Positions 29,331-60,506 of a stretch of DNA of 64,000 nt are shown piece by piece; position 1 is the first letter of the stretch; every line of letters begins with the position of its first letter. The stretch lies in the sequence record MW879344.1; one strand, written 5' to 3'. A model generated the notes under the pieces. It was not told the origin of the DNA, searched no databases, and saw only the letters and a program-made list of their open reading frames with translations. Position numbers and translations under genes: made by a program.

Positions 29331-29449
29331 CGGGAATTGGTGTAATGGCAGCACAACGTTATAACATAAATTCTTGTACAGGAATTTCACAGCAACCAAT
29401 ACAATTGCATAGGGAGCCGTGAGATAAGGTTCGATTCCTTGATTCCCGA
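29331..29449 (+). ncRNA. tRNA-like RNA with ACAGCAA-helix insert in anticodon arm (TTGCATA loop)
   Basis: CGGGAAT/ATTCCCG acceptor, D and T arms, AAATTC/GAATTT helix, ACAGCAA at 29389. Confidence 0.75.
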
Positions 29450-29638
29450 CTAATTAACTAAACCAGCACATTGCTGGTTTTTTCATTTCTGGAGTTTTAT
29501 AATGAAGATATTAAAGTTACACAAAACTGTAGGATATATTAAAATTACATTATTAAAAAATAATCCACAATATGGCGGTCGCTGTGATACGTGTGGAAGA
29601 TATGATAATGATGGTGGCCCACTATGTGGTAATGTTTT

Positions 29639-29899
29639 TTGTCCAGGAGGAAACTGATGAATCCTAATGATTTAAATAATTCCGAAAAATATACATGGTC
29701 TGATCTTCGTGAGAACTATGATAAGCTAAAACTTGTCAATCAAGAATTTATTGAATTGCATGGATTTGCAATTCCTGATGATGTTAAAGTTGGTGATGTT
29801 TTTGTAGTAGTTGAACTGACTGAAGATCATGGTACTCGTGTTGATCGTGGTTTCGTTATTCCTCGTCATTATCTTGACTTCTTTGAGGCAAACTGCTAA
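29639..29899 (+). CDS. small hypothetical protein
   Basis: GGAGG RBS; start probably 29657. Confidence 0.55.
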   Translation: MSRRKLMNPNDLNNSEKYTWSDLRENYDKLKLVNQEFIELHGFAIPDDVKVGDVFVVVELTEDHGTRVDRGFVIPRHYLDFFEANC

Positions 29900-30687
29900 T
29901 GCACTTTTTAATAATGGACAAATACTTTAATGAAGAAGGATTCCGTGTAATGAAAGATTACATGGTACAACATAATATATCCCATACTTCAGTAAAACCT
30001 GTCCCTGTACTTAATATATTCGTTCCTGAAGATGTTAATGATTATTCAGACGCTTCATATGAGAAGTATTTTGATAAATCTGTACCAACTATGTCATTTG
30101 GAAGCTATGCATTAGCTAATCAACTTATACAAGAAGGATATACTCCTGGTGGTTATATTAATGAGAACTTTAATATAAAAGTACAAATGGAACATTGGGG
30201 ATTAGATAGTTTTCTTAATGGAATGGCTATTTTTGGGACGTTAGAAAATATGACTGCTCCTTATTGGAAACGTATTTTTATTCGTCCAGTACACGATACT
30301 AAACAAATGTTGGCTACCGTTATTGAAAAAGAAAACTTTGATTATTCTTTAGAACTATTTCGTTATGGTAAAGAACCAGGATTTGAAATTATGATCTCTG
30401 AATTTAAAGAAATTAAAGCAGAGTTTCGTTTGTTTATTGTTCATGGTAAAGTTGTTGCACATTCATTATATAAGTTGAATGGTTCAGTTTGTATTGCATC
30501 ATCTGTTCCTGAAGAAATAATTACAAAAGCAGAAGAACTATGTAATATTTGGACACCTGCTGATGCGTTCGTAATGGATTTTGCAGAAACTGTTGACGGA
30601 TTTAAAGTACTCGAAGTTAATAACATAAACTGTGCTGGATTCTATGCATGTGATATTCCTTCAATTGTTGAGGCATTTATAAAATGA
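29899..30687 (+). CDS. ATP-grasp domain protein (R2K/DUF4343-like), second copy
   Basis: IFIRPVHDTK, AEFRLFIVHGKVV..SLY, MDFA...KVLEVNNINCAGFY. Confidence 0.75.
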   Translation: MHFLIMDKYFNEEGFRVMKDYMVQHNISHTSVKPVPVLNIFVPEDVNDYSDASYEKYFDKSVPTMSFGSYALANQLIQEGYTPGGYINENFNIKVQMEHWGLDSFLNGMAIFGTLENMTAPYWKRIFIRPVHDTKQMLATVIEKENFDYSLELFRYGKEPGFEIMISEFKEIKAEFRLFIVHGKVVAHSLYKLNGSVCIASSVPEEIITKAEELCNIWTPADAFVMDFAETVDGFKVLEVNNINCAGFYACDIPSIVEAFIK

Positions 30688-31052
30688 AAAATCATTTGAA
30701 CGAGTACTTTGAAGGATTAGATAATCTCATATTTGAATTTTATGAAACTATAAATCAAAATATTAGTTCAAAAACAATAACTATTCAAATGACTTTTTTA
30801 TATAATAAGCATATAAATTTTCATTATAATATTGAAAATGACGAATTGGTTATAGAAGATTTTGTTGATAAAATAAAATTAAAATATCCAAATTTCTCAA
30901 AACTTCAAGATGAAGCTTATCATTTTCAAAAAATGACAGTATGGCCTCATATTAGTTTTGAATGTACTGAAGTTGAGAAATTTATGATTGAAATTGAAAG
31001 GATTAAAAATGAAACCAAATTTACCCCAAGAGCCAAATCCGAATTTGATTGA
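30684..31052 (+). CDS. TEExxFQ-like family protein
   Basis: DEAYHFQKMT. Confidence 0.55.
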   Translation: MKNHLNEYFEGLDNLIFEFYETINQNISSKTITIQMTFLYNKHINFHYNIENDELVIEDFVDKIKLKYPNFSKLQDEAYHFQKMTVWPHISFECTEVEKFMIEIERIKNETKFTPRAKSEFD

Positions 31053-31245
31053 AAGTATGTGTATGCGTTTTGATCACTCACATGGTATTAGATCTCTACG
31101 TATGAAAGATGGTAAGTACGATGTTGAAACGGAAGAAGAATTTGAACGTAGGCGAGATTCGAATCGTAGAGTAATGCGACAATTGTATGAAGAAGTATCT
31201 GGTTATGGATTTTATCAATATCCAAAGGATAGTACTGATGAATGA
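30988..31245 (+). CDS. hypothetical protein
   Basis: ORF track. Confidence 0.55.
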   Translation: MKLKGLKMKPNLPQEPNPNLIESMCMRFDHSHGIRSLRMKDGKYDVETEEEFERRRDSNRRVMRQLYEEVSGYGFYQYPKDSTDE

Positions 31246-31669
31246 AATAGTAAGAAAACAACTTCATGATATAGCGAATAATGCACATTGCATTTATACT
31301 ACCATAATCAGAGAACGAGTTAAGTATTCAAAATTTGGGTCAAAGGTTGGCATTCAGATTGATAATGCAATTCAATTTTCTAATACACCTGATAAATTTG
31401 AAATGTGGATTAAATTTGGAAAACATACTATTATATATACTGATAACAGTGTAATATATCGTTATTGGGATAGTAAGAAGCCAGATAAACATATATATGA
31501 TGTGATTGATTTACCTGATATAAATAAATTTCAATTCACCGAGGAATATTATTTTCAGTACTCTACATTATTCAATTTCAAGTATTTAGAGTTAGAAGAT
31601 CTTAAAGCACTTGACACTATACGTAGAAAGGTACAAAACATTTGGAGTACACAATTACTATGTTGGTAA
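31187..31669 (+). CDS. TEExxFQ-motif family protein
   Basis: FTEEYYFQYST. Confidence 0.6.
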   Translation: MKKYLVMDFINIQRIVLMNEIVRKQLHDIANNAHCIYTTIIRERVKYSKFGSKVGIQIDNAIQFSNTPDKFEMWIKFGKHTIIYTDNSVIYRYWDSKKPDKHIYDVIDLPDINKFQFTEEYYFQYSTLFNFKYLELEDLKALDTIRRKVQNIWSTQLLCW

Positions 31670-31835
31670 CACGTTATGAATTAATTGATGGGGAATTGAT
31701 ACCTCATGAATTTGGTGAATATGTAAAATTCACTGATTATAAAAAAGTGGAAGATGCCAGAAGTAAAGCAGTATCTGATGCTGGTTGGGCTGCTGATGCA
31801 GCACGTGAACAAGAAGAAATAAATCGTAATAGAGG

Positions 31836-32075
31836 ATGGAATTAATGGCTATAAAAGCAAAACTTAATTTTTGTGATCTAGATTTAGATTATGCACGTAC
31901 AGCATGGGATGGTGCATACATGGTACTAGCAGAAGTTAATGAAGTACTGAAAGAACGTGGAATTAAAATTGAATTTTTGTTAGAAGTTCATTCGGAAGAA
32001 GATTATCCTTCTAAGTTTTGGGATGAAGAAGATGTTGAATACACTACTAATACTACGGAAATTACTGACGAATGA
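31836..32075 (+). CDS. small hypothetical protein
   Basis: coupled ORF. Confidence 0.55.
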   Translation: MELMAIKAKLNFCDLDLDYARTAWDGAYMVLAEVNEVLKERGIKIEFLLEVHSEEDYPSKFWDEEDVEYTTNTTEITDE

Positions 32076-32578
32076 AAGATCCTAATCTCAATAATGAATT
32101 TATTGATTTTTTAGCAGATGAATTTCCAGAGGTATCGTTTAGTACTACATACGTACATTGGCACCCATCTGTAGGTGAGTACTGTGTATATATCAATGAC
32201 ACGTGGAGTGGTTACGTTCCTGAAGAATATATATTTAAAGCCGGATTTGAGTATTATACTCTTTGGTCTAAGTATTGGGAAAAGTACCGTCAAACTGAAA
32301 TTTTTATGGATTTAAATAGAAAATATGTTCAATCAATTTATAACATTCTTCAAGAAGAAAATACTACTGAATCTGATATTAGCCTTAATGTACGTATTCT
32401 TATGGACATTATACGGAATCGCTCGTACCCTACAGATTATCAAAATTTTACCATAAAGATGATATTAGAAGTATTACAAAATAAAGGATACAATCAGTAC
32501 ACAGAAATGTTAGAAAACATTATTGGTGAAATAAATGACTTGGAAGAAAATAAACGAAGTCGTAGGAAGGTTTTATAA
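32072..32578 (+). CDS. hypothetical protein
   Basis: coupled ORF. Confidence 0.6.
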   Translation: MKDPNLNNEFIDFLADEFPEVSFSTTYVHWHPSVGEYCVYINDTWSGYVPEEYIFKAGFEYYTLWSKYWEKYRQTEIFMDLNRKYVQSIYNILQEENTTESDISLNVRILMDIIRNRSYPTDYQNFTIKMILEVLQNKGYNQYTEMLENIIGEINDLEENKRSRRKVL

Positions 32579-32981
32579 AAACTTTAGTACATTAAGAAAA
32601 ACAGTTAATCGTGGAGATTATTGTTATTTTAAACTTAATGATTATTATGAGATTAAATGTGGTGATGATTATTTGGTTCAATTTAAGTATAAACCAAATA
32701 GTCAAGATTATTATTATATGAATTATGATTATAATAATGATTCTGTTATGTTTTATACAACTAGAAAGTATTCTGGTTATTGGAAACATTCAGCACCTGA
32801 TAATATCGTAATATTTAAGAACTTAACAAGGTTATGTACAGAGGAAGGACATTTTCAGGAAATGACCAGACAGGACTTGACAGATTTTGAAATTCCTGAT
32901 ATAATTTCCTTATTGATGATGGGAAAAGCCATCGTTGACAAAACTAAGGAATATAGAAATGTCGGAACGTCCAGTACTTAA
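32535..32981 (+). CDS. TEExxFQ-motif family protein
   Basis: CTEEGHFQEMT. Confidence 0.6.
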   Translation: MTWKKINEVVGRFYKNFSTLRKTVNRGDYCYFKLNDYYEIKCGDDYLVQFKYKPNSQDYYYMNYDYNNDSVMFYTTRKYSGYWKHSAPDNIVIFKNLTRLCTEEGHFQEMTRQDLTDFEIPDIISLLMMGKAIVDKTKEYRNVGTSST

Positions 32982-42409: not shown

Positions 42410-42485
42410 GCCTTTGTAGCTCAGTTGGTAGAGCGGGAATCTCTAAAATTCTTTGTCGTCGGTTCGAGTCCGACCATCGGCACCA
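42410..42485 (+). tRNA. amber suppressor tRNA (anticodon CUA)
   Basis: GGAAT-CT-CTA-AA-ATTCT anticodon arm, canonical D/T arms, ACCA end; two mismatches in acceptor stem. Confidence 0.85.
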
Positions 42486-47662: not shown

Positions 47663-47778
47663 GCAGTGATCGTCTAGAGGCTTAGGACACGAAAAAGCGA
47701 TTCTTGGTTAAGAATCTTACGGCATCAATAAACTTTCATTTCACGAACGTAACGCAGGTTCGAATCCTGCTCACTGCA
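47663..47778 (+). tRNA. tRNA-Glu(UUC)-like gene interrupted by 43-nt helix/ACGGCA insert (47692-47734)
   Basis: Glu-type D arm GTCTAGAGGCTTAGGAC; CG|TTC-ATTTCAC-GAACG stem restored on removing the insert. Confidence 0.8.
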
Positions 47779-47796
47779 CTAATATTGGAGTAATAT

Positions 47797-48108: not shown

Positions 48109-48234
48109 GTGGGGTTAGCTCAGTCTGGTAGAGCAGCGAAAGAAAAAACAATGGAATCTTGAAAAGGATTCTAACAGCATTATATCTTCTACTGTAAATT
48201 CGCAGGTCGGTGAGTTCGAATCCACCATCCCACA
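48109..48234 (+). tRNA. tRNA-Tyr(GUA)-like gene interrupted by 51-nt helix/ACAGCA insert (48141-48191)
   Basis: GCGAA|CT-GTA-AA-TTCGC; short variable loop; bulged T stem. Confidence 0.7.
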
Positions 48235-48307
48235 CAAATTTGTCTTGACATGGTGTATCCTGTGTGTTATATTACTATCATCAATTAAACGAGATAGGAT
48301 TTAAATT

Positions 48308-49311: not shown

Positions 49312-49433
49312 GGCGAGTTAGCTCAGTTGGTAGAGCAGGAAAAAAACCGATTCTTGTATTGAATCGTACAGCAAACAATACTATTGCACTTTTAATGCCC
49401 TTGTCGGGGGTTCAATTCCCTCACTCGCCACCA
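49312..49433 (+). tRNA. tRNA-Lys(UUU) gene interrupted by 46-nt helix/ACAGCAA insert (49340-49385)
   Basis: removing the insert gives GG|GCA-CTTTTAA-TGCCC, a perfect 76-nt cloverleaf with ACCA. Confidence 0.85.
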
Positions 49434-49493: not shown

Positions 49494-50105
49494 ATGAATA
49501 TATGTTTACAATGTAATCAAGAAATTGATGATAAGAAAAAGTTTTGTAATAAATCTTGTGCGGCAAAGTACAATAATTCTCATAGAATATTGTCGGAAGA
49601 AACAAAATCTAAAATTTCTAAATCTTTAAAAGATCGAGAAGCTAAATTTATTGAAACTGAAAATGTTAAGGCTGGTAGACTTCGAGCAGGTGCAAAACGT
49701 AGTGAATATGCGATTGGAAAATTATTATCTGATGATTTTGAATCATTAAGTGTTATAAGAAAGAAAAAACGTGTAAAAATGGAACAAGATAATAAATGTT
49801 TAATATGTGATTTATCTGAATGGCGTGGTTCTTTATTAACATTGGAAGTAGATCATATAGATGGAAATAACATGAATAATAGTAGAGATAATTTAAGAGC
49901 TTTATGTCCTAATTGTCATTCACAAACTGAAACGTGGCGTGGGAAAAATAGTAAAAAAGTTATTTCAGATGAACTTTTAATTGAGATTATTTCAGTTTCT
50001 TCATCTATTGCAGAAGTTATTCGAAATACCAATATGTCTAAATCAAAAACTTCGTATAATAAAATCCGTGCTATTATGGAAATGAATAAACTATCATTTA
50101 ACTAA
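49494..50105 (+). CDS. HNH homing endonuclease
   Basis: CLQC..FCNKSC finger; LEVDHIDGNNMNN..DNLRALCPNCH. Confidence 0.9.
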   Translation: MNICLQCNQEIDDKKKFCNKSCAAKYNNSHRILSEETKSKISKSLKDREAKFIETENVKAGRLRAGAKRSEYAIGKLLSDDFESLSVIRKKKRVKMEQDNKCLICDLSEWRGSLLTLEVDHIDGNNMNNSRDNLRALCPNCHSQTETWRGKNSKKVISDELLIEIISVSSSIAEVIRNTNMSKSKTSYNKIRAIMEMNKLSFN

Positions 50106-52639: not shown

Positions 52640-53323
52640 ATGAATATCATTGAACGAGCAAAACATATTGTTTCCGTTTCTGAATTTGAAAGTAATGTTA
52701 ATCCAATAGAAATGAAAAAGATTAAAGCAGTTTGTCCATACGATGAACAATATATTTTACGTATGGTGGTAAGTACCGATGGTTTGACCTATCACTTACC
52801 TATTGAATTACGATGGATGTATCCATTGTATATTGCAGCTTTAAAACATCAAACTGAAGTAATTGGGATAAAACATCCGTTTTGTTATATTACTGTTCGT
52901 CATGGTTTAGTTAAATCAATAACTGATGACGAATGGCACGTTGATGGATTCAGTACTAAAATTGTTCATGTACCTGAACAGAACTACATTTGGTCTAACA
53001 GTATTCCTACCGAATACACCAATGTTTCTGTTAAGTTCCCTGATGATTTTGATTCTAATATTCATAATGTGAATCATTACTTACAAAAGTTTGTCCATAA
53101 TGATGAAGTTCAGCAGTGTAAAGAAAATGTGTTGTATTGTTTAGACCCATATATCTTACATCGTCGTCCATCATCAAGTACTGGTGAAGTACGTACTTTT
53201 GTTCGTATCTCATTTGTTCCAATTGAAATCAATGATGTTAATAACACCCAAAATAAGTTATTACCACGTACTTATAACAACGATGGGGTTCAAGTACGAA
53301 ATAAATTGAGAACGTATGGCTAA
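52640..53323 (+). CDS. 2OG-Fe(II) oxygenase-like protein
   Basis: WHVDG...ILHRRP...RTFVRISF (HxD...H...R pattern). Confidence 0.6.
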   Translation: MNIIERAKHIVSVSEFESNVNPIEMKKIKAVCPYDEQYILRMVVSTDGLTYHLPIELRWMYPLYIAALKHQTEVIGIKHPFCYITVRHGLVKSITDDEWHVDGFSTKIVHVPEQNYIWSNSIPTEYTNVSVKFPDDFDSNIHNVNHYLQKFVHNDEVQQCKENVLYCLDPYILHRRPSSSTGEVRTFVRISFVPIEINDVNNTQNKLLPRTYNNDGVQVRNKLRTYG

Positions 53324-53729
53324 AATTATTTGTGGATTTCCTGGTATAGGTAAGAGTAGTATTAAAAATATCGGCAAAGTACTTGATTTGGATAGTTCTT
53401 TGTATACCAAGAATTCTTTATTTCCTGCTAATTATATTGTTGATATTGTATCTGCAATGGATGAATATGATTATATTTTGGTAAGTACGCATGACGTACT
53501 TAGAAAAGAATTACAATCAATGGGTATTAGTTATACTAATGTATATCCAGAGATTGATTTAGGTGAAGAATACCACGACCGTTATGTTCAACGCGGAAGT
53601 CCTGAAAGTTTTATTAATTTTATTGATGAAAATTGGGATGACTTCATATACGAATTGCAGTATGATGATTCTGAATATGTTGAACTGGAAAGCGGTCAAT
53701 TTCTTTCAGATATTATAGCAAATATTTGA
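53316..53729 (+). CDS. small P-loop kinase-like protein
   Basis: IICGFPGIGKSS..VLDLDSS. Confidence 0.65.
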   Translation: MAKIICGFPGIGKSSIKNIGKVLDLDSSLYTKNSLFPANYIVDIVSAMDEYDYILVSTHDVLRKELQSMGISYTNVYPEIDLGEEYHDRYVQRGSPESFINFIDENWDDFIYELQYDDSEYVELESGQFLSDIIANI

Positions 53730-53755
53730 AACGAAAGAAAAAATTGTGGTATAAT
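53727..53755 (+). promoter_or_regulatory. TGAAAC-N17-TATAAT promoter
   Basis: exact motif, precedes permuted tRNA-like RNA. Confidence 0.7.
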
Positions 53756-53772: not shown

Positions 53773-53889
53773 GGAATCTTACAGCAAAAATACTAATTTT
53801 TGATGAAAACGAAACGACGAGGTTCGAATCCTCACCCACGAATTGCCTTATTATTAGTGGGAGCACGGTGCTGGATAAACAAAGATTCC
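53773..53889 (+). ncRNA. circularly permuted tRNA-like RNA (YrlA/Y-RNA-like) 1
   Basis: GGAATCT-T-ACAGCAA...T-arm GAGG-TTCGAAT-CCTC, CCCAC/GTGGG closed acceptor, AGCA-CGG-TGCT, AGATTCC. Confidence 0.75.
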
Positions 53890-53910
53890 AGAATTTAAGT
53901 TAGAAAATTA

Positions 53911-53939
53911 TGAAACAAATCAAAAATTTGTGGTATAAT
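53911..53939 (+). promoter_or_regulatory. TGAAAC-N17-TATAAT promoter
   Basis: exact motif. Confidence 0.7.
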
Positions 53940-53951
53940 ATAAGAAGTAAA

Positions 53952-54059
53952 GCGGGATGGTGATTGATGAAAGCTATTATTTGATTCTAGAAAATCATAA
54001 TAAGCGAGTAAGAGAACAGGGTTCTTAATATCACGAGGGTTCGATCCCCTGTCGCTGCA
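53952..54059 (+). ncRNA. aberrant tRNA-like RNA
   Basis: T-arm GAGGG-TTCGATC-CCCT and imperfect acceptor; two internal hairpins replace D/anticodon arms. Confidence 0.45.
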
Positions 54060-54072
54060 CAAAGCAACAAAC

Positions 54073-54190
54073 GAAATCTCACAGCAAACAAAACAATTTT
54101 TTTCCTTGCATAGAAAAACGGTGGGGTTCGATTCCCCAACATCCAAGTTGCTTTTAGGATGTGTCTGGAAGGCCGTATGACAAAGATTTC
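54073..54190 (+). ncRNA. circularly permuted tRNA-like RNA 2 (TTGCATA loop)
   Basis: GAAATCT-C-ACAGCAA, GGGG-TTCGATT-CCCC, CATCC/GGATG, AGATTTC. Confidence 0.75.
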
Positions 54191-54444: not shown

Positions 54445-54556
54445 AGGATTCGCACAGCAACAATAAAATCTTAAAATTCAATTGGTGAAAACAACCTTGC
54501 AGTTCGATTCTGCTTCCACAATGCGTGGATCTGGTCGATAGAAAAAACCGAATCCT
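54445..54556 (+). ncRNA. circularly permuted tRNA-like RNA 3
   Basis: AGGATTCG-C-ACAGCAA, GCAG-TTCGATT-CTGC, TCCAC/GTGGA, CGAATCCT. Confidence 0.72.
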
Positions 54557-54594: not shown

Positions 54595-54747
54595 GGATTT
54601 ATACAGCAAACATAATCCTAAAATAAAACATACGATAATGTTACTAACTCGGAATTCGTTCCCTTCGTTAGTACTTGGCAACTTGGGTACTTAAATAAGT
54701 TGTATCACCTCACGTGTATCGGATTAGAGGTGATTATAAATAAATCC
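54595..54747 (+). ncRNA. derived member of the ACAGCAA family (permuted type) 4
   Basis: GGATTTA-T-ACAGCAA ... TAAATCC; AACAT/ATGTT, ACTAAC/GTTAGT, ATCACCTC/GAGGTGAT helices. Confidence 0.6.
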
Positions 54748-55213: not shown

Positions 55214-55288
55214 GGGGTACGTAGCTCAGTCTGGTAGAGCAGCCATGCGAAAACGGTGTGTCGGTGGTTCGAATCCACTCGCTCCCCA
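55214..55288 (+). tRNA. degenerate tRNA (Phe GAA-like, probable pseudo-tRNA)
   Basis: good D and T arms, mismatched acceptor and anticodon stems. Confidence 0.5.
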
Positions 55289-55292
55289 CTAA

Positions 55293-55349
55293 GGAATCTA
55301 GCAGCAACCATAACCCAATCAAACTTTTAATTTGACAATTATGGATTCC
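55293..55349 (+). ncRNA. mini ACAGCAA-family RNA carrying only a Lys(UUU) anticodon stem-loop
   Basis: GGAATCT-A-GCAGCAA ... TCAAA-CTTTTAA-TTTGA ... GGATTCC. Confidence 0.8.
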
Positions 55350-56030: not shown

Positions 56031-56717
56031 ATGTCAAAAAAGACTGATAAAGAAGTAAAAGATACAAAAGAAAAGTACACTGTTGTTAAACACGGTTCAC
56101 TAACACTAGTGAATACACCAACAGTAAAAACTTTCTATATGAATGGTTCTATTGATCATCCTACATTAACTAAGTTCCAAAAGTTCTTAGAAGATACATG
56201 TACGGAAAATAATAAAATTGATACCGAAGAAACTGAACGCAAAGAAAAGGATGAATTTAAAAAGATTCATGATCCTGAATCTAAGCCAGAGTTTGTTCCT
56301 GCTAAACGTAAAGTTGAGCGTATCAATCTGGTTATCAATAGTGGTGGTGGTTTAGTTGCAGTAATGCTAGAAGTTGTAGCACTAATGAAAACTTCACCAA
56401 TTCCAATTGATACCTACTGTTTTGGTTCTGCAATGAGTGCAGCTTTCTTTATCTTCTTACATGGCAAACGCCGTTTTGTTGGTGAAGGTGCCTCATTTAT
56501 GACACATAGCATTGGTGCTATGGCATGGGATAATGTACCAAACATGACAATTCGTATGGAGTACTTGGTTAAACAAAACGAGTACGCACAACAGGAAATT
56601 GCTAAACGTACTGGAATTCCTCTTGAAAAATTAAAAGAGAAAGAACATCTCGATTGGTACTTGACTGCTGAAGAAGCGTTAGATGTTAAAATCGGTGAAT
56701 ATTTGATCCGAGATTAA
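56031..56717 (+). CDS. clpP: ClpP-like protease
   Basis: INSGGG, GSAMSAA (catalytic Ser), FMTHS, DWYLTAEEAL. Confidence 0.8.
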   Translation: MSKKTDKEVKDTKEKYTVVKHGSLTLVNTPTVKTFYMNGSIDHPTLTKFQKFLEDTCTENNKIDTEETERKEKDEFKKIHDPESKPEFVPAKRKVERINLVINSGGGLVAVMLEVVALMKTSPIPIDTYCFGSAMSAAFFIFLHGKRRFVGEGASFMTHSIGAMAWDNVPNMTIRMEYLVKQNEYAQQEIAKRTGIPLEKLKEKEHLDWYLTAEEALDVKIGEYLIRD

Positions 56718-56757
56718 ATATAAATTCTGGATTCGAAAGAATCCTTTTTTAAGTGAG

Positions 56758-56988
56758 ATGATTATGGACAATCAACACAAACATATTAAAGGGTATCGTG
56801 ACCTTTCACAAAAAGAAGTGGATGCGATGAATGAGATTAAACAACTGGCTGCCATCGTTGGAGAGTTGATAGAAAAACTTGAAAGTACTGAATCAGTAGA
56901 TAAACGTTGGCTTGCAATTGCAAAGACGGATTTACAAAAAGGATTCATGTCAGCAGTACGAAGTGTGGCTAAACCAGATTCCTTCTAA
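56758..56988 (+). CDS. acb2: Acb2-family cyclic-nucleotide sponge (anti-CBASS)
   Basis: MDNQHKHIKGYRDLSQKEVDAMNEIK...RWLAIAKTDLQKGFMSAVRSVAKPDSF matches the Acb2 pattern. Confidence 0.85.
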   Translation: MIMDNQHKHIKGYRDLSQKEVDAMNEIKQLAAIVGELIEKLESTESVDKRWLAIAKTDLQKGFMSAVRSVAKPDSF

Positions 56989-56997
56989 GGAACAAAG

Positions 56998-57378
56998 ATG
57001 TATACAACGGTTAATCATGCTGATATAATTGATGATATTATAACTGAAATACTTGAAATTTATACATGTCGAGTTGAAATTTATAAAGATGGTCATTTAT
57101 TCACTCAGTACGGGTATAATACTAAACATAATGTGAATTATCATATAAATGTAAAGTACTATAATGATAATCCAAGTAATGGTGATAAAGCGAATAGCTT
57201 AATGGTAGAATTTAAATTTACCAATAGAGTTCCGAAGGGACTGAAAAATCATTACAAGTTATCTATACCTGAAATAACAAGTCTTACAGAAGAACGGCAT
57301 TTTCAATTAATGTTTGTCACTGATGATATGTATTTGGATTATGAAGTTATAAATAAATTACGTACACATATTGTGTAA
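56998..57378 (+). CDS. TEExxFQ-motif family protein
   Basis: LTEERHFQLM. Confidence 0.6.
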   Translation: MYTTVNHADIIDDIITEILEIYTCRVEIYKDGHLFTQYGYNTKHNVNYHINVKYYNDNPSNGDKANSLMVEFKFTNRVPKGLKNHYKLSIPEITSLTEERHFQLMFVTDDMYLDYEVINKLRTHIV

Positions 57379-57389
57379 AAAAAAAGTTT

Positions 57390-57443
57390 TAGAATCTAAC
57401 AGCAATCAAAACTCATTGGATATATGAAAAAAGATAGATTCTA
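57390..57443 (+). ncRNA. mini ACAGCAA-family RNA (TCAT-TGGATAT-ATGA hairpin)
   Basis: TAGAATCT-A-ACAGCAA ... AGATTCTA; abuts tRNA-Ile. Confidence 0.75.
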
Positions 57444-57449
57444 GTATTT

Positions 57450-57522
57450 GGGAATATAATTCAGTTGGTAGAATGCTCGACCGATAATCGAGTCGCCGCT
57501 GGTTCGAGTCCAGCTATTCCCA
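57450..57522 (+). tRNA. tRNA-Ile(GAU), C at position 33
   Basis: cloverleaf, CTCGA-CC-GAT-AA-TCGAG. Confidence 0.85.
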
Positions 57523-57621
57523 CGAAGTAGTTCAGTACTGAAAAATGTACAGTGAAATTATTCAACACTATAGGTAGCACTTTGAATGAATCAGTAAGCC
57601 TATAAGTAACTACAATAAATT

Positions 57622-57750
57622 TGGAATTCAACAGCAATTCACTTACTAAAAACAGCTACCTCACGGTTTGTAGGTTCAAGTCCTACCTTGTACTTTCGAG
57701 TACATGTGGTGAAAATGGTAAACACGGCTGTCCAAAAGAAATGAATTCCA
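57622..57750 (+). ncRNA. circularly permuted tRNA-like RNA 5 (Leu-type D arm, long variable arm)
   Basis: TGGAATTCA-ACAGCAA, ACAGC/GCTGT, GTAGG-TTCAAGT-CCTAC, TGTACT-TTCG-AGTACA, TGAATTCCA. Confidence 0.8.
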
Positions 57751-57802
57751 GTATTAATTAAGACATAAATATTCTTATACACTTTTTTGTAAGGATATAA
57801 TT

Positions 57803-58402
57803 ATGGAAATGAAAAAGTTGATGGAAGATATTTCTGCCATCATGGAAGGACAATTACCTGGTTATTATTATCATGGAAGTTCTGCCCCAATATCAAATTT
57901 TAGTGATGAGTTTGTTGGTAGAGGAAATGATGAATACGGTCCGGGAATATATTTTAGTTCAGTTCCAAATACTTCTATAGGTTATGCAAAAGATGGCGGT
58001 TCTAATGGAATGGTATATCAGTGCGAAATCAATTTAAGAAAAGAACTATCTAAAAAAACTAGAGTTAATAAAGCAGTACTATTAAAATTAATGCAAAATA
58101 CACCTGATGAAGATGCATATACTAACTGGAATGAAAATAAAAATGTTGCTTATAGAACAGCATTACAGGGTTATGTAGATGAAGGTAATATGTATGATGC
58201 GTTAATGGGTGTTTGGTACGATTGGTATAGAGAATATCCTGTTCAATTCGTGCGTTCACTAGTACAGTTAGGATATGATGGATACATATATACTTTTGCA
58301 AGCGGTGAACGTTTTATTATAGTATATAATCCAGCAAGTATAAAAGTTGTAAACACATTCAATCCAGAAGAAGCTATGCAGAAACTGATTGGAAGTGAAT
58401 AA
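57803..58402 (+). CDS. ADP-ribosyltransferase-like (ART-fold) protein, probably late-expressed
   Basis: YYHGS...F...YGPGIYFS..YA...VY pattern; CATAAATA late word upstream. Confidence 0.55.
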   Translation: MEMKKLMEDISAIMEGQLPGYYYHGSSAPISNFSDEFVGRGNDEYGPGIYFSSVPNTSIGYAKDGGSNGMVYQCEINLRKELSKKTRVNKAVLLKLMQNTPDEDAYTNWNENKNVAYRTALQGYVDEGNMYDALMGVWYDWYREYPVQFVRSLVQLGYDGYIYTFASGERFIIVYNPASIKVVNTFNPEEAMQKLIGSE

Positions 58403-58409
58403 TAAGATT

Positions 58410-58529
58410 TGGAATTCAACAGCAAATCATTCTAAACCCGTAGCATGTCGTAGGTTCAAGTCCTACCAGTACTTTCGAGTACTGTAGCTCAGTTGGTAGA
58501 GCAGCCACCTTAAAAAGAAATGAATTCCA
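58410..58529 (+). ncRNA. circularly permuted tRNA-like RNA 6 (canonical class I D arm)
   Basis: T-arm, then CAGTACT-TTCG-AGTACTG acceptor, then TA-GCTC-AGTTGGTA-GAGC D-arm, inside TGGAATTCA/TGAATTCCA. Confidence 0.85.
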
Positions 58530-58560
58530 GTATTAATTAAAACAACATGAGTATAAATCA

Positions 58561-59010
58561 ATGTCTGATAAGCATCAATTTAAAGTAAACATCGGTGATT
58601 GGTCACAAGATGGTCATAATCAATATGATGTTTTAGTTCTTAACAGTACTAAACCAGTAGATGAAGTACAAAAAGCATTTAAAAAAGCTGCAACTGATTT
58701 ACATTTACTAGTAAATGGTCGTTTTCTAATTGCAGATGAATTTGAAGATTGTAGTCTATCTGAAGACCATGCAGAAGTTCTTAAAAATGCAGGTGTAAAA
58801 TTTGATGATTTAGTGTATAATGATGGCGATGATGAAGAACCAAATTATATTATTGAAGGTTCAAGTGATATGACTATCCTTGTGATGCGGATCGCCCAAC
58901 TTGAATTGGACTTTGAATTTGAAATTACGAATGATGCAATTCCGAACTTTAACGGGTTCTGGACAGAAGAACAAATGCCATCAATCGGATATGGTTTGTA
59001 TAACATATAA
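58561..59010 (+). CDS. conserved phage hypothetical protein
   Basis: IGDWSQDGH motif. Confidence 0.65.
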   Translation: MSDKHQFKVNIGDWSQDGHNQYDVLVLNSTKPVDEVQKAFKKAATDLHLLVNGRFLIADEFEDCSLSEDHAEVLKNAGVKFDDLVYNDGDDEEPNYIIEGSSDMTILVMRIAQLELDFEFEITNDAIPNFNGFWTEEQMPSIGYGLYNI

Positions 59011-59019
59011 AACAAGTTT

Positions 59020-59084
59020 TGGAATCTAGCAGCACCCATAAAATGAAATCAACTGTTAATTGAAAAATTCAAAAATGGATTCCA
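59020..59084 (+). ncRNA. mini ACAGCAA-family RNA carrying only an Asn(GUU) anticodon stem-loop
   Basis: TGGAATCT-A-GCAGCAC ... TCAA-CTGTTAA-TTGA ... GGATTCCA. Confidence 0.78.
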
Positions 59085-59103
59085 GCCTATTTCGGAGTAA
59101 AAA

Positions 59104-59373
59104 ATGTATTATGCTCGATTAGAATATCCAAACAATGGATATGAGATTGAAAGAATACGTCTTAAAGCCTTAGATCGCAAAAAGTACTACCCAGTAGTTT
59201 CGATTGATATTGGTAGTTCAAGTACTCGCATATATCTTGAAGGTGATAAGAATGCATATAATAGTGTGAACTTTGAATTCTATACCAAACATGGTGATGA
59301 ATATATTCTTGAAGATATTTTCGAAGACCCTGATTTAAATCCGTACTTGGATGATGATGATGAAGAATATTAA
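59104..59373 (+). CDS. hypothetical protein
   Basis: GGAG RBS. Confidence 0.6.
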   Translation: MYYARLEYPNNGYEIERIRLKALDRKKYYPVVSIDIGSSSTRIYLEGDKNAYNSVNFEFYTKHGDEYILEDIFEDPDLNPYLDDDDEEY

Positions 59374-59393
59374 ATAAAAATACCACAAATAAA

Positions 59394-59422
59394 TGAAACG
59401 CTTCAAAAAATTGTGGTATAAT
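59394..59422 (+). promoter_or_regulatory. TGAAAC-N17-TATAAT promoter
   Basis: exact motif; TACCACAA/TTGTGGTA inverted repeat overlaps. Confidence 0.7.
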
Positions 59423-59441
59423 ATAAGTAAGTTAAACAAGA

Positions 59442-59513
59442 GGTTATGTCGTATAAAGGTTATTACGGAGAGCTGTTAACTCTTTTATCTTGGTTCGATT
59501 CCAAGCATGACCG
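59442..59513 (+). tRNA. tRNA-Asn(GUU)
   Basis: cloverleaf, CT-GTT-AA. Confidence 0.9.
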
Positions 59514-59630
59514 CAAAAAGTTAAATTCACCAGGCGTACTATGGTGGGAAAGGTATCATGATACCAATTCGAATAGAATACGTATTAAACCCTTGAACGG
59601 TTTTCTGTAAACTCAATTTAACAAATAATT

Positions 59631-59685
59631 AAGAATCTAACAGCAATCAAAACTCATTCGATTATATGAAAAAAGATAGATTCTT
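59631..59685 (+). ncRNA. mini ACAGCAA-family RNA (TCAT-TCGATTAT-ATGA)
   Basis: near-duplicate of 57390-57443; abuts tRNA-Gln. Confidence 0.75.
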
Positions 59686-59690
59686 GTTTT

Positions 59691-59763
59691 AGGAGTATGG
59701 TGTAATTGGTTAGCACACGTGACTTTGACTCACGTAGTTGAGGTTCGAGTCCTTATATTCCTG
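59691..59763 (+). tRNA. tRNA-Gln(UUG)
   Basis: cloverleaf, CT-TTG-AC. Confidence 0.9.
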
Positions 59764-59914
59764 CAAATTAAAATTTCATTCATTTCCTTGTGTGAAACAA
59801 GCTGGTATGATTCCCCTTGCTTGTAAAATTATCGAACGGGAACCGCGTTGCACCTGTACAGGTCAGATTGTAAAGATCGAGTATGTACAGTACTGAGAGC
59901 GGCAGTACAATAAA

Positions 59915-59996
59915 GCGGGATTAGCTCAGTGGTAGAGCACTTGCCTTCCAAGCAAGAGGCGAATAGGTTCCATCGGTTCGAATCCGATATTCCGCT
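59915..59996 (+). tRNA. tRNA-Gly(UCC) with 15-nt variable region
   Basis: CTTGC-CT-TCC-AA-GCAAG, U73. Confidence 0.85.
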
Positions 59997-60114
59997 CAAA
60001 CTAAACAAACAATAAGGTGATTTTTATGCTATAGAATCCTAGTACTGGTCCTCCTAAAGAATTTAATTCTGATATAAACAACTCAAAATTAAACTACTAT
60101 AGGAAGAACATACC

Positions 60115-60441
60115 ATGTTAAACAAAGAACAATATATTACTGTAAAAAATACTTGGAAAGCTGTAAAAGAACATAACATTTTTGATCATGTGATCTATAA
60201 TGTACTTCGTGGAGTCCCATCTGATACTGGTTTCGCACCAATTACAGACAGGGGTCGTTTACACGCTAACAACAATGACCCGTTCAATATGTACAATTAC
60301 GCAGTTCGTGAAATTCATTATGAATTAAACGAAAAACGGTACAATTACGAAAAGACAGTAAAGCATTATTCTGAACTATTCGGCATTGAATTTACAAAAG
60401 AACTCATCGAAGAAATTGTTTCTTTGATTAAAGTTAAATAA
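60115..60441 (+). CDS. hypothetical protein
   Basis: ORF track. Confidence 0.65.
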   Translation: MLNKEQYITVKNTWKAVKEHNIFDHVIYNVLRGVPSDTGFAPITDRGRLHANNNDPFNMYNYAVREIHYELNEKRYNYEKTVKHYSELFGIEFTKELIEEIVSLIKVK

Positions 60442-60449
60442 CAGAATTA

Positions 60450-60506
60450 AAGAATCCAGCAGCAACTAAAACTCATTCGCTTAATATGAAAAAGAAACGG
60501 ATTCTT
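60450..60506 (+). ncRNA. mini ACAGCAA-family RNA (TCAT-TCGCTTAAT-ATGA)
   Basis: AAGAATCC-A-GCAGCAA ... GGATTCTT. Confidence 0.72.

What the first reader, a model, noticed from the sequence alone, without database searches (positions are those of the whole stretch)
29331..60506. A 15-member phage RNA family built on one helix+ACAGCAA module, in three tRNA-related topologies
Seen in sequence: 15 intergenic elements share a 5-9 bp helix followed 1-2 nt later by ACAGCAA (10 copies), GCAGCAA (2), GCAGCAC, ACAGCAT or ACGGCAT, with A-rich linkers. The helix covaries: GGAATCT/AGATTCC, GAAATCT/AGATTTC, AGGATTCG/CGAATCCT, GGATTTA/TAAATCC, GGAATTC/GAATTCC. The module is always joined to tRNA parts at the anticodon arm. 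It is inserted in a linear tRNA at 29331, 47663, 48109 and 49312. It closes a circularly permuted tRNA at 53773, 54073, 54445, 54595, 57622 and 58410. It closes a bare anticodon-like hairpin at 55293, 57390, 59020, 59631 and 60450. Established knowledge: bacterial YrlA Y RNAs are tRNA mimics whose Ro60-binding stem replaces the anticodon arm. Inference: this is a single protein-docking module, possibly for a Ro60/TROVE protein encoded outside the window, expanded into a tRNA-decoy or tethering system. I know of no description of the three-topology arrangement.
Basis: partly seen in the sequence, partly recalled or inferred. Interest (0 to 1): 0.92.

Follow-up and report, generated by a model that had tools for sequence, protein, structure and literature searches.

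The report
Phage Y-like RNAs built on tRNA parts
A jumbo phage carries 15 small RNA genes that graft one conserved docking module onto whole tRNAs, tRNA bodies or anticodon-like hairpins; the module most likely binds a Ro60-like ring protein encoded elsewhere in the genome, which makes this a previously undescribed and widespread class of phage 'Y RNAs'.

Summary
The window is Erwinia phage pEa_SNUABM_49, a Rak2-like jumbo phage close to Serratia phage BF. It has 15 plus-strand intergenic elements, found nowhere else in the 358-kb genome. Each has a 6-9 bp helix, then 1-2 nt, then R-C-R-G-C-A-H, then a G-free linker; an A-rich strand lies opposite.

- Four sit inside the anticodon stem of tRNAs. 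Deleting the 42-51 nt insert in silico restores canonical tRNA-Pro, Glu, Tyr and Lys.
- Five close YrlA-like, acceptor-capped tRNA bodies, and one closes a non-tRNA three-hairpin RNA.
- Five close short hairpins. Two of these have clear anticodon-like loops (Lys, Asn).

No Rfam family reaches threshold; YrlA matches only the tRNA-like core of one copy.

A DUF2828+DUF7788 protein about 175-205 kb away folds as Ro60 (Foldseek E 9e-11). In unrelated phages (Felixounavirus, mycobacteriophage, Listeria, Enterococcus, metagenomic) the same module lies directly beside this gene. A model trained only on Rak2-like copies gives 39 hits there, all on the gene's strand.

Best reading: a new Y-RNA-like family that partners DUF2828-type Ro60 proteins. 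A decoy or tether function is inferred, and binding is untested.

The parts
29331..29450 (+). Class A: tRNA-Pro(AGG)-like gene with a 48-nt module insert at 29359-29406. The insert holds hairpin AAAUUCUU/AGGAAUUU, then c, then ACAGCAA, then an 11-nt linker. It lies in the 5' strand of the anticodon stem (ACG|insert|GC).
   Evidence: Sequence, helix, fold. ARAGORN calls tRNA-Pro(agg) once the insert is removed in silico.
47663..47779 (+). Class A: tRNA-Glu(UUC)-like gene with a 42-nt insert at 47692-47733 (GAUUCUU/AAGAAUC, uu, ACGGCAU).
   Evidence: GenBank MT939488 annotates it as a 116-nt 'tRNA-Phe(aaa)', an intron-type miscall. Orthologues occur in CBB, GAP32 and XbC2.
48109..48235 (+). Class A: tRNA-Tyr(GUA)-like gene with a 51-nt insert at 48141-48191 (GGAAUCUU/AGGAUUCU, a, ACAGCAU). 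The insert sits between the 5' strand of the anticodon stem and the loop.
   Evidence: An orthologue occurs in fHe-Yen9-04.
49312..49433 (+). Class A: tRNA-Lys(UUU) gene with an encoded CCA and a 46-nt insert at 49340-49385 (CGAUUC/GAAUCG, u, ACAGCAA, 11-nt linker). The stem reads GG|insert|GCA-CUUUUAA-UGCCC.
   Evidence: Rfam tRNA scores 46.5 bits despite the insert. It is annotated 'tRNA-Lys(ttt)', 122 nt, in MT939488, and an HNH endonuclease gene follows.
53773..53889 (+). Class B: GGAAUCU...AGAUUCC closes a permuted tRNA-like body. The body has a Phe-like hairpin UUUUG-AUGAAAA-CGAAA, a T arm GAGGUUCGAAUCCUC, a 5-bp acceptor-like stem closed by a 17-nt loop, and a mini D arm.
   Evidence: A promoter-like TTGAAA-N18-TGnTATAAT lies at 53726-53755. 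Orthologues occur in all relatives.
54073..54190 (+). Class B: GAAAUCU...AGAUUUC closes a tRNA-like body with T arm GGGGUUCGAUUCCCC and acceptor-like stem ACAUCC/GGAUGU closed by a loop.
54445..54556 (+). Class B: AGGAUUCG...CGAAUCCU closes a tRNA-like body with a Phe-like hairpin UUG-GUGAAAA-CAA, T arm GCAGUUCGAUUCUGC and a capped stem UCCAC/GUGGA. It starts 4 nt after tRNA-Glu.
   Evidence: The helix shows compensatory changes in CBB and GAP32 (AAGAAUCG/CGAUUCUU).
54595..54747 (+). GGAUUUA...UAAAUCC closes a 139-nt cargo of three hairpins. This cargo is not tRNA-like.
   Evidence: In the alifold of 5 orthologues, 15 of 35 pairs show compensatory changes and there is no T or D arm.
55215..55349 (+). 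Pseudo-tRNA (55215-55287, aberrant anticodon arm) followed after 5 nt by a class C element at 55293-55349. The element reads GGAAUCU a GCAGCAA, 11-nt linker, UCAAA-CUUUUAA-UUUGA (Lys UUU-like loop), caauuau, GGAUUCC.
   Evidence: Rfam tRNA scores 36.4 bits. Model R1 scores 63 bits. The same position in XbC2 and Kaldavass holds an intact class A tRNA-Lys.
57389..57444 (+). Class C: UUAGAAUCU a ACAGCAA ... UCAU-UGGAUAU-AUGA ... aaaaagau AGAUUCUAG. It ends 5 nt before tRNA-Ile.
   Evidence: R1 scores 73.8 bits.
57621..57751 (+). Class B: UUGGAAUUC...GAAUUCCAG closes a tRNA-like body with anticodon-stem-like ACAGC/GCUGU, T arm GUAGGUUCAAGUCCUAC, an acceptor-like stem capped by UUCG, and a D-like arm.
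   Evidence: R1 E-value is 0.06 across the large insertion.
58409..58530 (+). Class B: UUGGAAUUC...GAAUUCCAG closes a tRNA body with a T arm, a 7-bp acceptor stem capped by UUCG, a canonical D arm UAGCUCAGUUGGUAGAGCA and stem GCCAC/GUAGC. There is no anticodon loop.
   Evidence: Rfam YrlA scores 40.5 bits (gathering 69) on 58443-58505 only, model positions 24-84 of 114. Orthologues of 83-93% identity occur in GAP32, XbC2, Kaldavass and Yen9 phages and are unannotated everywhere.
59019..59085 (+). Class C: UUGGAAUCU a GCAGCAC ... UCAA-CUGUUAA-UUGA (Asn GUU-like loop) ... GGAUUCCAG.
   Evidence: The loop is kept in copies from six relatives. R1 scores 64.6 bits.
59630..59686 (+). Class C: UAAGAAUCU a ACAGCAA ... 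UCAU-(8-nt loop)-AUGA ... AGAUUCUUG. It ends 4 nt before tRNA-Gln.
60450..60506 (+). Class C: AAGAAUCC a GCAGCAA ... UCAU-(9-nt loop)-AUGA ... GGAUUCUU.

Best explanation
The 15 elements are paralogous small RNAs of a Y-RNA-like family. Each has two parts.

(i) A conserved docking module. It is a helix whose ends read 5'-WGGA.../...UCCWG-3', followed by 1-2 nt, an invariant single-stranded R-C-A-G-C-A-A, and a G-free linker of about 11 nt. A 7-9 nt A-rich strand lies opposite. Together these form a stem plus a large internal loop, as in Y RNAs.

(ii) A variable cargo made of tRNA parts: a complete tRNA, an acceptor-capped tRNA body, or a short hairpin that in several copies reproduces an anticodon loop.

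The module is most likely the binding site of the phage's Ro60-like ring protein (DUF2828 = divergent TROVE, plus DUF7788 = vWA). That protein is encoded about 175-205 kb away, next to an ATP-dependent RNA ligase. By analogy with Ro60-Y RNA particles, the protein would hold the module. The cargo would then present tRNA features to tRNA-directed proteins such as host anticodon nucleases, exoribonucleases, or the phage's own repair enzymes (Rnl1, Pnkp, RlaP, CCA-adding enzyme). The effect would be to titrate them or tether them to the ring.

Shown here: the family, its structure and covariation, the tRNA nature of the cargos, the Ro60-like fold of the protein, and the genomic coupling of RNA and protein in other phages.

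Inferred: physical binding, and the decoy, tether or counter-defence role.
For: - Family and helix.
- Core conservation over 79 distinct copies: C2, G4, C5 and A6 are invariant, the linker after the core is G-free, and the opposite strand is A-rich.
- Cargo: class A copies become canonical tRNAs when the insert is removed. Class B copies have a T arm, a capped acceptor stem and a D arm, and one matches the tRNA-like core of Rfam YrlA.
- Protein: Pfam DUF2828 (4e-33) plus DUF7788 (8e-41). The AlphaFold model has pLDDT 87 and pTM 0.86. The top 12 Foldseek hits in the PDB are all Ro60/TROVE structures, with E from 9e-11 to 8e-6. Homologues in mycobacteriophages are annotated 'Ro-like RNA binding protein'.
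- Coupling, model test: model R1 was trained only on Rak2-like class C copies. On 1.03 Mb of other DUF2828 loci it gives 39 hits at E<=1, all on the gene's strand, and about 16 lie within 150 nt upstream of the start codon.
- Coupling, pattern test: density is 4.83 per 10 kb in the 1.5 kb upstream, against 0.15 per 10 kb on the opposite strand.
- The same module lies beside the gene in metagenomic phages, Felixounavirus EC6, mycobacteriophage Clautastrophe, Listeria LMTA-94 and Enterococcus EFDG1.
- RNA-repair context: Rnl1, Pnkp, RlaP, a CCA-adding enzyme and a second RNA ligase two genes upstream of the Ro60-like gene.
- Counter-defence context: an Acb2/Tad1-domain gene and an ADP-ribosyltransferase gene lie among the RNAs. 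In the Felixounavirus Bas63, the Ro60-like gp130, which sits upstream of the tRNA genes, was reported to counter the Ppl defence system (10.1101/2024.10.10.617714).
Against: - No binding or expression data exist for this phage.
- In Rak2-like phages the RNAs are not next to the Ro60-like gene, and R1 finds no copy within 8 kb of it. Here the link therefore rests on co-occurrence in one genome plus adjacency in other lineages.
- The conserved motif differs from the known Ro60-binding motifs GNCGAAN0-1G and GGUCCGA (PMC4201824).
- Only 34 of 71 other loci showed a strict-pattern copy within 1.5 kb upstream.
- The cargo anticodon-like loops cover many identities (Lys, Asn, Gln, Phe, Glu, Tyr, Pro, and Cys and Ser in other phages), so no single target enzyme is implied.
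Confidence: 0.7

Rival explanations
1. The module is a removable cassette: a protein-spliced tRNA intron or processing signal. A phage or host endonuclease would cut at both ends of the insert, and Pnkp plus an RNA ligase would reseal the tRNA. The permuted and bare forms would then be processing intermediates, circular products or relics.
For: - Removing the insert restores perfect 5-bp anticodon stems and canonical cloverleaves in all four class A genes.
- Public annotations already treat two of them as intron-containing tRNAs.
- The phage encodes Pnkp, Rnl1 and a second RNA ligase.
- The distance from the helix to the 3' junction is nearly constant, 19 nt in three of the four (and sequence).
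Against: - The insert is 42-51 nt, too short for a group I intron, and no intron family was hit in Rfam.
- The junctions lie in a multiloop and do not form a bulge-helix-bulge.
- Eleven of 15 copies have no exons to join, and acceptor stems are capped by tetraloops.
- The same module stands alone beside Ro60-like genes in phages where no interrupted tRNA was seen.
- The phage also carries ordinary uninterrupted Lys, Tyr, Glu and Pro tRNAs.
- This reading is not exclusive of Ro60-like binding.
Confidence: 0.1
2. The module is a structured RNA element with a different partner or none. It could be the site of another phage or host protein, or a self-contained tertiary motif or ribozyme. Where it lies next to DUF2828 genes it could instead be a cis-regulatory leader of that gene and not a trans-acting partner RNA.
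For: - In Vibrio phage phi-pp2 the 3' strand of the helix overlaps the start codon, and the Shine-Dalgarno sequence lies inside the element.
- Many copies sit 40-130 nt upstream of the DUF2828 start codon.
- In this genome the RNAs and the gene are far apart.
Against: - In Felixounavirus and in the mycobacteriophage the copies lie downstream of the gene, among tRNAs, so they are not leaders.
- Several copies per locus with tRNA-like cargos match the rsr-yrlA/yrlB pattern (PMC4201824).
- No known ribozyme or motif family matches in Rfam.
Confidence: 0.12
3. The repeats act at the DNA level, as promoter or terminator parts, recombination or homing sites, or a miniature mobile element that spread through the tRNA island.
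For: - The elements are intergenic and multi-copy.
- HNH endonuclease genes occur nearby.
- Hairpins could act as terminators.
Against: - Strand bias is strict: 84 copies on the + strand in eight loci, against 0-1 per locus on the - strand.
- Compensatory changes keep RNA pairing, including G-U pairs.
- The partner strand can be 18 to 150 nt away, with structured tRNA-like cargo between.
- Only two terminator-like matches touch the elements. One, on the - strand, overlaps the A49312 hairpin. The other is the T arm of the 57621 element.
- The insertion point is defined in tRNA structural terms.
Confidence: 0.03

Closest known systems
Bacterial YrlA / YrlB Y RNAs (Rfam RF02553; Chen et al. 2014, PMC4201824)
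   Same: - A terminal stem formed by the 5' and 3' ends carries the protein-binding motif on its 5' side, next to a large internal loop with an A-rich 3' strand.
- In YrlA the cargo is a tRNA-like domain (T arm, D arm, acceptor-like stem closed by a loop) attached where the anticodon arm would be.
- A second, shorter Y RNA (YrlB) lacks the full tRNA-like domain, as class C does here.
- The genes lie beside the Ro60 gene, and several copies per locus are usual.
- The core of one copy here matches the YrlA model at 40.5 bits, and one mycobacteriophage copy matches at 39.3 bits.
   Different: - The conserved motif is RCAGCAA after a WGGA.../...UCCWG helix, not GNCGAAN0-1G.
- No copy reaches the Rfam gathering score of 69 bits.
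- The partner is a DUF2828-type protein that Pfam does not recognise as TROVE.
- Here there are 15 copies, not adjacent to the protein gene.
- The module also occurs as an insertion in otherwise complete tRNAs and around bare anticodon-like hairpins.
Thermus phage phiLo Ro60 with Yrl1/Yrl2 (NAR 2025, PMC12135203)
   Same: A phage-encoded Ro60 homologue has Y-RNA-like genes directly upstream. Binding was shown by EMSA and cryo-EM, and a role in hijacking host PNPase was proposed. Its structure (9l5y, 9kop) is among the Foldseek hits of the protein studied here.
   Different: That protein is a canonical TROVE protein, and its RNAs were identified by the CGAA motif. No tRNA-derived cargo, no ACAGCAA motif and no expansion were reported.
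Bas63 (Felixounavirus) gp130, a Ro60-like counter-defence protein (PhageMaP preprint 10.1101/2024.10.10.617714)
   Same: A Ro60-like protein is encoded directly upstream of the phage tRNA cluster, which is the layout of the DUF2828 gene in Felixounavirus EC6. The authors guessed that some annotated tRNAs might be Y RNAs. Its deletion sensitises the phage to the Ppl defence system.
   Different: No RNA partner was identified there. Orthology of gp130 to the DUF2828 protein was not verified here; only the genus and the gene layout agree.
Interrupted and circularly permuted tRNA genes of archaea and red algae (bulge-helix-bulge introns, Cyanidioschyzon merolae permuted tRNAs)
   Same: tRNA genes are interrupted in the anticodon arm, and there are genes in which the 3' half precedes the 5' half, with the termini paired in a helix.
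   Different: Those are processed into functional tRNAs by a splicing endonuclease that recognises a bulge-helix-bulge. Here no such motif is seen, acceptor stems are sealed by tetraloops, several cargos lack an anticodon loop, and the shared module tracks a Ro60-like gene.
Phage tRNAs that replace or evade host tRNAs cleaved by anticodon nucleases (T4 Pnkp/Rnl1 repair of PrrC-cut tRNA-Lys; T5 tRNAs versus PARIS and retron nucleases). This comparison comes from general knowledge and was not examined here.
   Same: These are tRNA-derived phage RNAs placed in a tRNA island together with RNA-repair and anti-defence genes. The cargos include Lys(UUU), Glu(UUC), Gln-like, Tyr(GUA) and Asn(GUU) anticodon loops, which are typical nuclease targets.
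   Different: Those are working tRNAs. Here the anticodon arm carries a bulky insert or stands alone, so decoding is unlikely. The cargos also include identities not known as nuclease targets.

Membership tests
YrlA (Rfam RF02553) bacterial Y RNA | Scores at or above the family's gathering threshold (69 bits) | tested here: not met
   The best match is 40.5 bits at 58443-58505, covering model positions 24-84 of 114 only. The other 14 copies give no match at E<=10.
YrlA (Rfam RF02553) bacterial Y RNA | GNCGAAN0-1G Ro60-binding motif near the 5' end (PMC4201824) | tested here: not met
   All copies carry R-C-R-G-C-A-H instead, and C2, G4, C5 and A6 are invariant in 79 distinct copies.
YrlA (Rfam RF02553) bacterial Y RNA | tRNA-like domain: T arm, D arm and an acceptor-like stem closed by a loop, joined to the terminal stem at the anticodon-arm position | tested here: met
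   This is met for 53773, 54073, 54445, 57621 and 58409. It is not met for 54595 or for the five class C copies.
YrlA (Rfam RF02553) bacterial Y RNA | Encoded within about 2 kb of a Ro60 (TROVE) gene | tested here: not met
   In this genome the Ro60-like gene is about 175-205 kb away, and no copy lies within 8 kb of it. The feature is met for the same module in other phages.
Y RNA in the functional sense (RNA bound by a Ro60-family protein) | A Ro60-family protein is encoded by the same genome | tested here: met
   The DUF2828+DUF7788 protein has a predicted fold matching Ro60 over its full length, at E 9e-11.
Y RNA in the functional sense (RNA bound by a Ro60-family protein) | Physical binding to the Ro60-family protein | not testable with these tools
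   This needs RIP/CLIP or EMSA.
tRNA (class A copies) | Canonical cloverleaf with a 7-nt anticodon loop | tested here: met
   It is met only after the 42-51 nt insert is removed in silico. ARAGORN then calls Pro(agg), Glu(ttc), Tyr(gta) and Lys(ttt), and calls nothing on the full sequences in no-intron mode.
Group I intron-containing bacterial tRNA gene | A self-splicing group I core (about 200 nt or more, P3-P9) in the anticodon loop | tested here: not met
   The inserts are 42-51 nt, lie in the anticodon stem, and gave no Rfam intron hit.
Archaeal/eukaryal-type tRNA intron or permuted tRNA gene | A bulge-helix-bulge at the two junctions, and a product that is a functional tRNA | tested here: not met
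   By inspection of sequences and MFE folds, the junctions lie in a multiloop with A-rich and G-free single strands. Class B acceptor stems are capped by UUCG or other loops, and several lack an anticodon loop. A splicing endonuclease gene was not searched for systematically.

The most novel reading that the evidence does not exclude
Phages from many families use a Ro60-like ring as a common chassis. One RNA docking module is grafted onto interchangeable tRNA-derived cargos: whole tRNAs, tRNA bodies and single anticodon arms. The resulting panel of particles would display specific anticodon loops as baits. These baits would capture or misdirect host tRNA-targeting immune nucleases, or hand damaged tRNAs to the phage's ligase and kinase repair set. 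The Rak2-like jumbo phages would then carry the largest such panel seen in this survey (15 RNAs), including tRNA/Y-RNA chimeras, for which I found no published description.
Probability: 0.3. Interest if true: 0.9.

Novelty: new variant of a known kind. Interest (0 to 1): 0.72.

Why it matters
Ro60 and its Y RNAs are conserved from bacteria to humans, yet what the tRNA-like part of bacterial Y RNAs does remains open. This finding bears on that question in four ways.

- It defines a second, sequence-distinct Y-RNA-like family. The family is tied to a Ro60-like protein that domain databases label only as DUF2828, and homologues of that protein occur in 709 phage genome records.
- It gives a simple, searchable signature: a helix followed by ACAGCAA.
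- The docking module is portable. It can be inserted into a complete tRNA, can close a tRNA body, or can close a bare anticodon-like arm. That portability points to the cargo as the functional 'bait'.
- A related Ro60-like protein was reported to counter an anti-phage defence system. The family therefore makes the role of phage Ro60 particles in the tRNA and RNA-repair arms race directly testable in laboratory E. coli phages.

It also corrects current annotation. Two of the four interrupted tRNAs are annotated, as long or mis-assigned tRNAs, and the other two interrupted tRNAs and the remaining 11 elements are not annotated at all.

Tried and rejected
- ACAGCAA counted alone is not significant, 14 found against 9.2 expected. 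Only the composite motif is.
- Rfam at gathering and at permissive thresholds gave only tRNA and a partial YrlA match.
- An exact-pattern scan of IMG/VR (GGAATCTNACAGCAA) returned mostly chance matches. Only contigs longer than 330 kb were relatives.
- Sequence searches of the DUF2828 protein against PDB chains found no significant Ro60 match, whether with the single sequence or a profile (best TROVE E-value 1.5). Only the fold comparison found Ro60 (versus 58).
- I considered a pseudoknot between ACAGCAA and a UUGC(U) in the loop closing the acceptor stem. It is present in two copies and absent in the others, so I dropped it.
- I compared the junction by eye with a kink-turn, CsrA GGA sites and Hfq (ARN)n sites. 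None fits consistently.
- The abundant long noncoding RNAs of Staphylococcus phage K near tRNA genes (PMC9241854) looked like possible expression evidence. That region has no DUF2828 gene and no core motif.
- The supplement of the jumbo-phage survey and two reviews or papers on Ro/TROVE systems were not held in the library.
- My guess at the Bas63 accession was wrong, so orthology of Bas63 gp130 was not verified.
- The promoter scan as a whole is at chance level, 66 found against 66.5 expected. Only three repeated extended -10 sites are worth noting.

Full report
Source. The window matches Erwinia phage pEa_SNUABM_49 (MW879344.1; window position 53300 corresponds to record position 301300) at 100% identity. 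It is about 99.5% identical to Serratia phage BF, genus Eneladusvirus, a Rak2-like jumbo phage of 357 kb. The window covers most of the phage's tRNA island. ARAGORN and Rfam each tRNAs, with overlapping but not identical sets, and all are on the + strand.

Observation. All 15 elements exist at the stated places, with the stated core variants. Each core (R-C-R-G-C-A-H) is preceded after 1-2 nt by a strand with consensus RGAAUCY. That strand has a perfect 6-9 bp partner, either about 18-20 nt upstream (4 copies) or 38-139 nt downstream (11 copies). ACAGCAA alone is not enriched. The composite motif occurs only on the + strand between 29.3 and 60.5 kb. The scanned remainder of the near-identical genomes, about 290 kb, holds four isolated coding-region matches, three on the + strand and one on the - strand.

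Anatomy. The geometry is the same in all three arrangements. The 3' strand of the helix (X') is preceded by a 7-12 nt A-rich stretch. The 5' strand (X) is followed by one nucleotide, the core, and a G-free linker of about 11 nt that runs into the cargo.

Class A consists of complete tRNAs with the whole module, as a hairpin, inserted in the 5' strand of the anticodon stem. The inserts are at 29359-29406, 47692-47733, 48141-48191 and 49340-49385. ARAGORN finds nothing in the full sequences in its no-intron mode. After in-silico removal of the insert it calls tRNA-Pro(AGG), Glu(UUC), Tyr(GUA) and Lys(UUU), each with a perfect 5-bp anticodon stem. Public records annotate two of them as over-long tRNAs, and GAP32 and XbC2 likewise.

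Class B is the circular permutation of class A. The helix is open at the RNA termini and the acceptor end is sealed. The 58409 and 57621 copies have a T arm, an acceptor stem capped by UUCG, and a D arm. The cap sequence varies among orthologues while the stems are kept. The 54595 copy is an exception, with three covarying hairpins and no tRNA features.

Class C is the module around a short hairpin. The loop CUUUUAA (Lys) occurs at 55293. The loop CUGUUAA (Asn) occurs at 59019 and is kept in copies from six relatives. Gln-like and Phe-like loops occur elsewhere. Three window copies carry a conserved UCAU/AUGA stem with non-canonical loops.

Several copies abut tRNA genes within 4-5 nt, so they are probably released from the same transcripts by tRNA processing. 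This is inference. One copy has its own extended -10 promoter-like site.

Conservation. Syntenic regions of CBB, GAP32, XbC2, Kaldavass, fHe-Yen9-04 and two uncultured relatives carry 6-15 copies each on the + strand and 0-1 on the - strand. Over 79 distinct copies, C2, G4, C5 and A6 of the core never change. Helix positions 1-7 each show 2-5 standard pair types. Swapping partners between copies lowers pairing from 603 of 632 cells to 480 +/- 6. My scan required a paired helix of at least 6 bp, so the 100% pairing of the inner six positions is partly by construction. The shuffle test and the tool's own test on the class C alignment (covariation 0.219 against 0.110, reached by 0 of 500 shuffles; slid registers 21-50% paired against 95.6%) do not depend on that requirement. 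XbC2 has a class A tRNA-Lys whose module helix is AAUUACA/UGUAAUU, unrelated in sequence to the usual helix.

Known RNA families. Nothing but tRNA reaches an Rfam gathering score. YrlA matches only the tRNA-like core of the 58409 copy, at 40.5 bits against a threshold of 69. The Ro60-binding motif described for YrlA is GNCGAAN0-1G (PMC4201824), and it is absent here.

The partner. I read the annotation of the near-identical genome MT939488, and of BF for the first 50 kb. Nothing is named TROVE or RtcB. A 508-aa hypothetical protein at 100645-102171 lies two genes after an RNA ligase that has an OB-fold N-terminal domain. It hits Pfam DUF2828 and DUF7788. An AlphaFold model built on 26 homologues (pLDDT 87.3, pTM 0.86) has Ro60 structures as its top 12 Foldseek hits: X. 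laevis and human Ro60, D. radiodurans Rsr and Thermus phage phiLo Ro60. These hits have E from 9e-11 to 8e-6 and TM-scores up to 0.58 over about 550 aligned columns, and the next hits are isolated vWA domains. Sequence methods alone do not see the relationship. Homologues occur in 709 phage records. In mycobacteriophages they are annotated 'Ro-like RNA binding protein' and elsewhere 'RNA-binding protein'. The genome also encodes T4-type Rnl1 and Pnkp, an RlaP nucleotidyltransferase, a CCA-adding enzyme, TyrRS, a Thg1-like enzyme and peptidyl-tRNA hydrolase.

Link between RNA and protein. In this genome the two are far apart. I therefore looked at unrelated phages that encode a homologue.

- In two metagenomic contigs, the 500-900 nt gap directly upstream of the gene holds two copies in one contig and at least four in the other. 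These include a Cys-anticodon-like hairpin and a permuted tRNA-like form.
- Across 75 further viral loci (1.0 Mb), helix (7 bp or more) plus RCAGCAA occurs at 4.83 per 10 kb in the 1.5 kb upstream on the gene's strand. The density is 0.15 per 10 kb on the opposite strand away from the gene, and zero on the opposite strand upstream.
- Model R1 was built only from 28 class C copies of Rak2-like phages. It finds 39 hits at E<=1 in those loci, all on the gene's strand, and about 16 lie within 150 nt of the start codon.
- The same layout is seen in annotated phages. Felixounavirus EC6 has four copies, one of them permuted tRNA-like, among the tRNAs immediately downstream of the gene.
- Mycobacteriophage Clautastrophe has three copies right after the gene. 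The middle one scores 39 bits on YrlA, but only through its tRNA-like core.
- Listeria phage LMTA-94 has three copies upstream, and Enterococcus phage EFDG1 has three upstream, two of them permuted tRNA-like.

Across all these lineages the shared features are the helix ends 5'-WGGA/UCCWG-3', the ACAGCAA core, the G-free linker and the A-rich opposite strand.

Mechanism. Established knowledge holds that Y RNAs bind the outer surface of the Ro60 ring through a conserved stem, and that a second module tethers other proteins or gates the ring's cavity (PMC4201824; PMC12135203). By analogy, I infer that the DUF2828 protein binds the helix and ACAGCAA, and that the tRNA-derived cargo engages tRNA-directed proteins. 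A 42-51 nt insert, with or without a bound 55-kDa protein, in the anticodon stem should keep class A RNAs out of the ribosome. The phage also has ordinary Lys, Tyr, Glu and Pro tRNAs. The class A RNAs therefore look like full-identity mimics, not decoders. Three observations point to a role in the conflict over tRNA integrity. The Ro60-like gene lies beside an RNA ligase. An Acb2/Tad1-domain gene (56758-56988) and an ADP-ribosyltransferase gene (57803-58402) sit among the RNAs. A Ro60-like protein in the Felixounavirus Bas63 was reported to counter the Ppl defence system (genus confirmed). Which protein the cargos address is unknown, because the loops cover many identities.

Rivals. The intron reading explains the clean restoration of the tRNAs. 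It does not explain the 11 exon-less copies, the capped acceptors, or the coupling to the Ro60-like gene. It could still hold in addition to Ro60-like binding. A cis-regulatory leader reading fits some upstream copies, notably Vibrio phage phi-pp2, where the helix overlaps the start codon. It does not fit the downstream and distant copies. A DNA-level element is unlikely given the strict strand bias and the RNA-type covariation.

Novelty. Four things are already known: Ro60 homologues in phages, tRNA-mimicking Y RNAs, their adjacency to Ro60 genes, and a published guess that some Felixounavirus 'tRNAs' might be Y RNAs. I found no Rfam family and no paper describing the following four points:
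- the RCAGCAA module;
- its pairing with DUF2828-type proteins across phage families;
- its expansion to 15 copies in Rak2-like phages;
- its insertion into intact tRNAs.
I therefore rate this a new variant of a known kind.

Noticed in passing
window 56758-56988 and 57803-58402 (also 56031-56717): Protein genes interleaved with the RNAs include an Acb2/Tad1 hairpin-domain protein (anti-CBASS/anti-Thoeris sponge family, E 8e-19), an ART-PolyVal ADP-ribosyltransferase (E 2e-11) and a ClpP-like protease. This part of the tRNA island looks like a counter-defence island.
   Followed up: partly
window 42410-42485: ARAGORN calls a 'tRNA-Pyl' with anticodon CUA, which would make it a phage-encoded amber-suppressor-type tRNA. 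Rfam tRNA scores it at 60 bits.
   Followed up: no
window 53726-53755, 53910-53939, 59393-59422: Three copies of a near-identical extended -10 promoter-like sequence (aaaaaTTGTGGTATAATATA) occur. One lies directly upstream of the 53773 element, one lies before an unannotated stretch at 53950-54066 that contains a T-arm-like GAGGGTTCGATCCCCT, and one lies before tRNA-Asn.
   Followed up: partly
window 29150-29330, 57524-57615, 59515-59625, 59765-59915: These intergenic stretches between tRNA genes are unannotated and relatively G+C-rich. They have no ORF and no Rfam match, and could be further structured RNAs.
   Followed up: no
window 49494-50105 and 29899-30687: An HNH/NUMOD3 homing-endonuclease gene directly follows the interrupted tRNA-Lys. 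An R2K-clade ATP-grasp protein gene lies about 450 nt downstream of the interrupted tRNA-Pro.
   Followed up: partly
L222 (Vibrio phage phi-pp2) 2460-2505: This locus has a single degenerate copy of the module. Its 3' helix strand overlaps the ATG of the DUF2828 gene, and the Shine-Dalgarno sequence lies inside the element. This suggests possible autoregulation of the Ro60-like gene.
   Followed up: no
L221 (Listeria phage LMTA-94) 5349-6506: A gene annotated 'tRNA-splicing ligase' (RtcB-type by its name) lies 1.3 kb downstream of the DUF2828 gene. This echoes the rtcB-rsr-yrlA operon of Salmonella.
   Followed up: no
L122:898-965 and L123:1295-1362 (uncultured Rak2-like phages): In a class A tRNA-Lys, the module strand AUUGGAUUC is also complementary to the 3' half of the tRNA's own T arm (GAAUCCAGU). 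More generally, the module helix GGAAUC/GAUUCC resembles the T-arm sequence GGUUCGAAUCC. This may hint at the evolutionary origin of the module or at an alternative pairing.
   Followed up: no
MT939488.1 312036-312122 (outside the window): A second tRNA-Lys(UUU) is annotated at 87 nt, longer than a standard class I tRNA. It has no helix+RCAGCAA motif.
   Followed up: no
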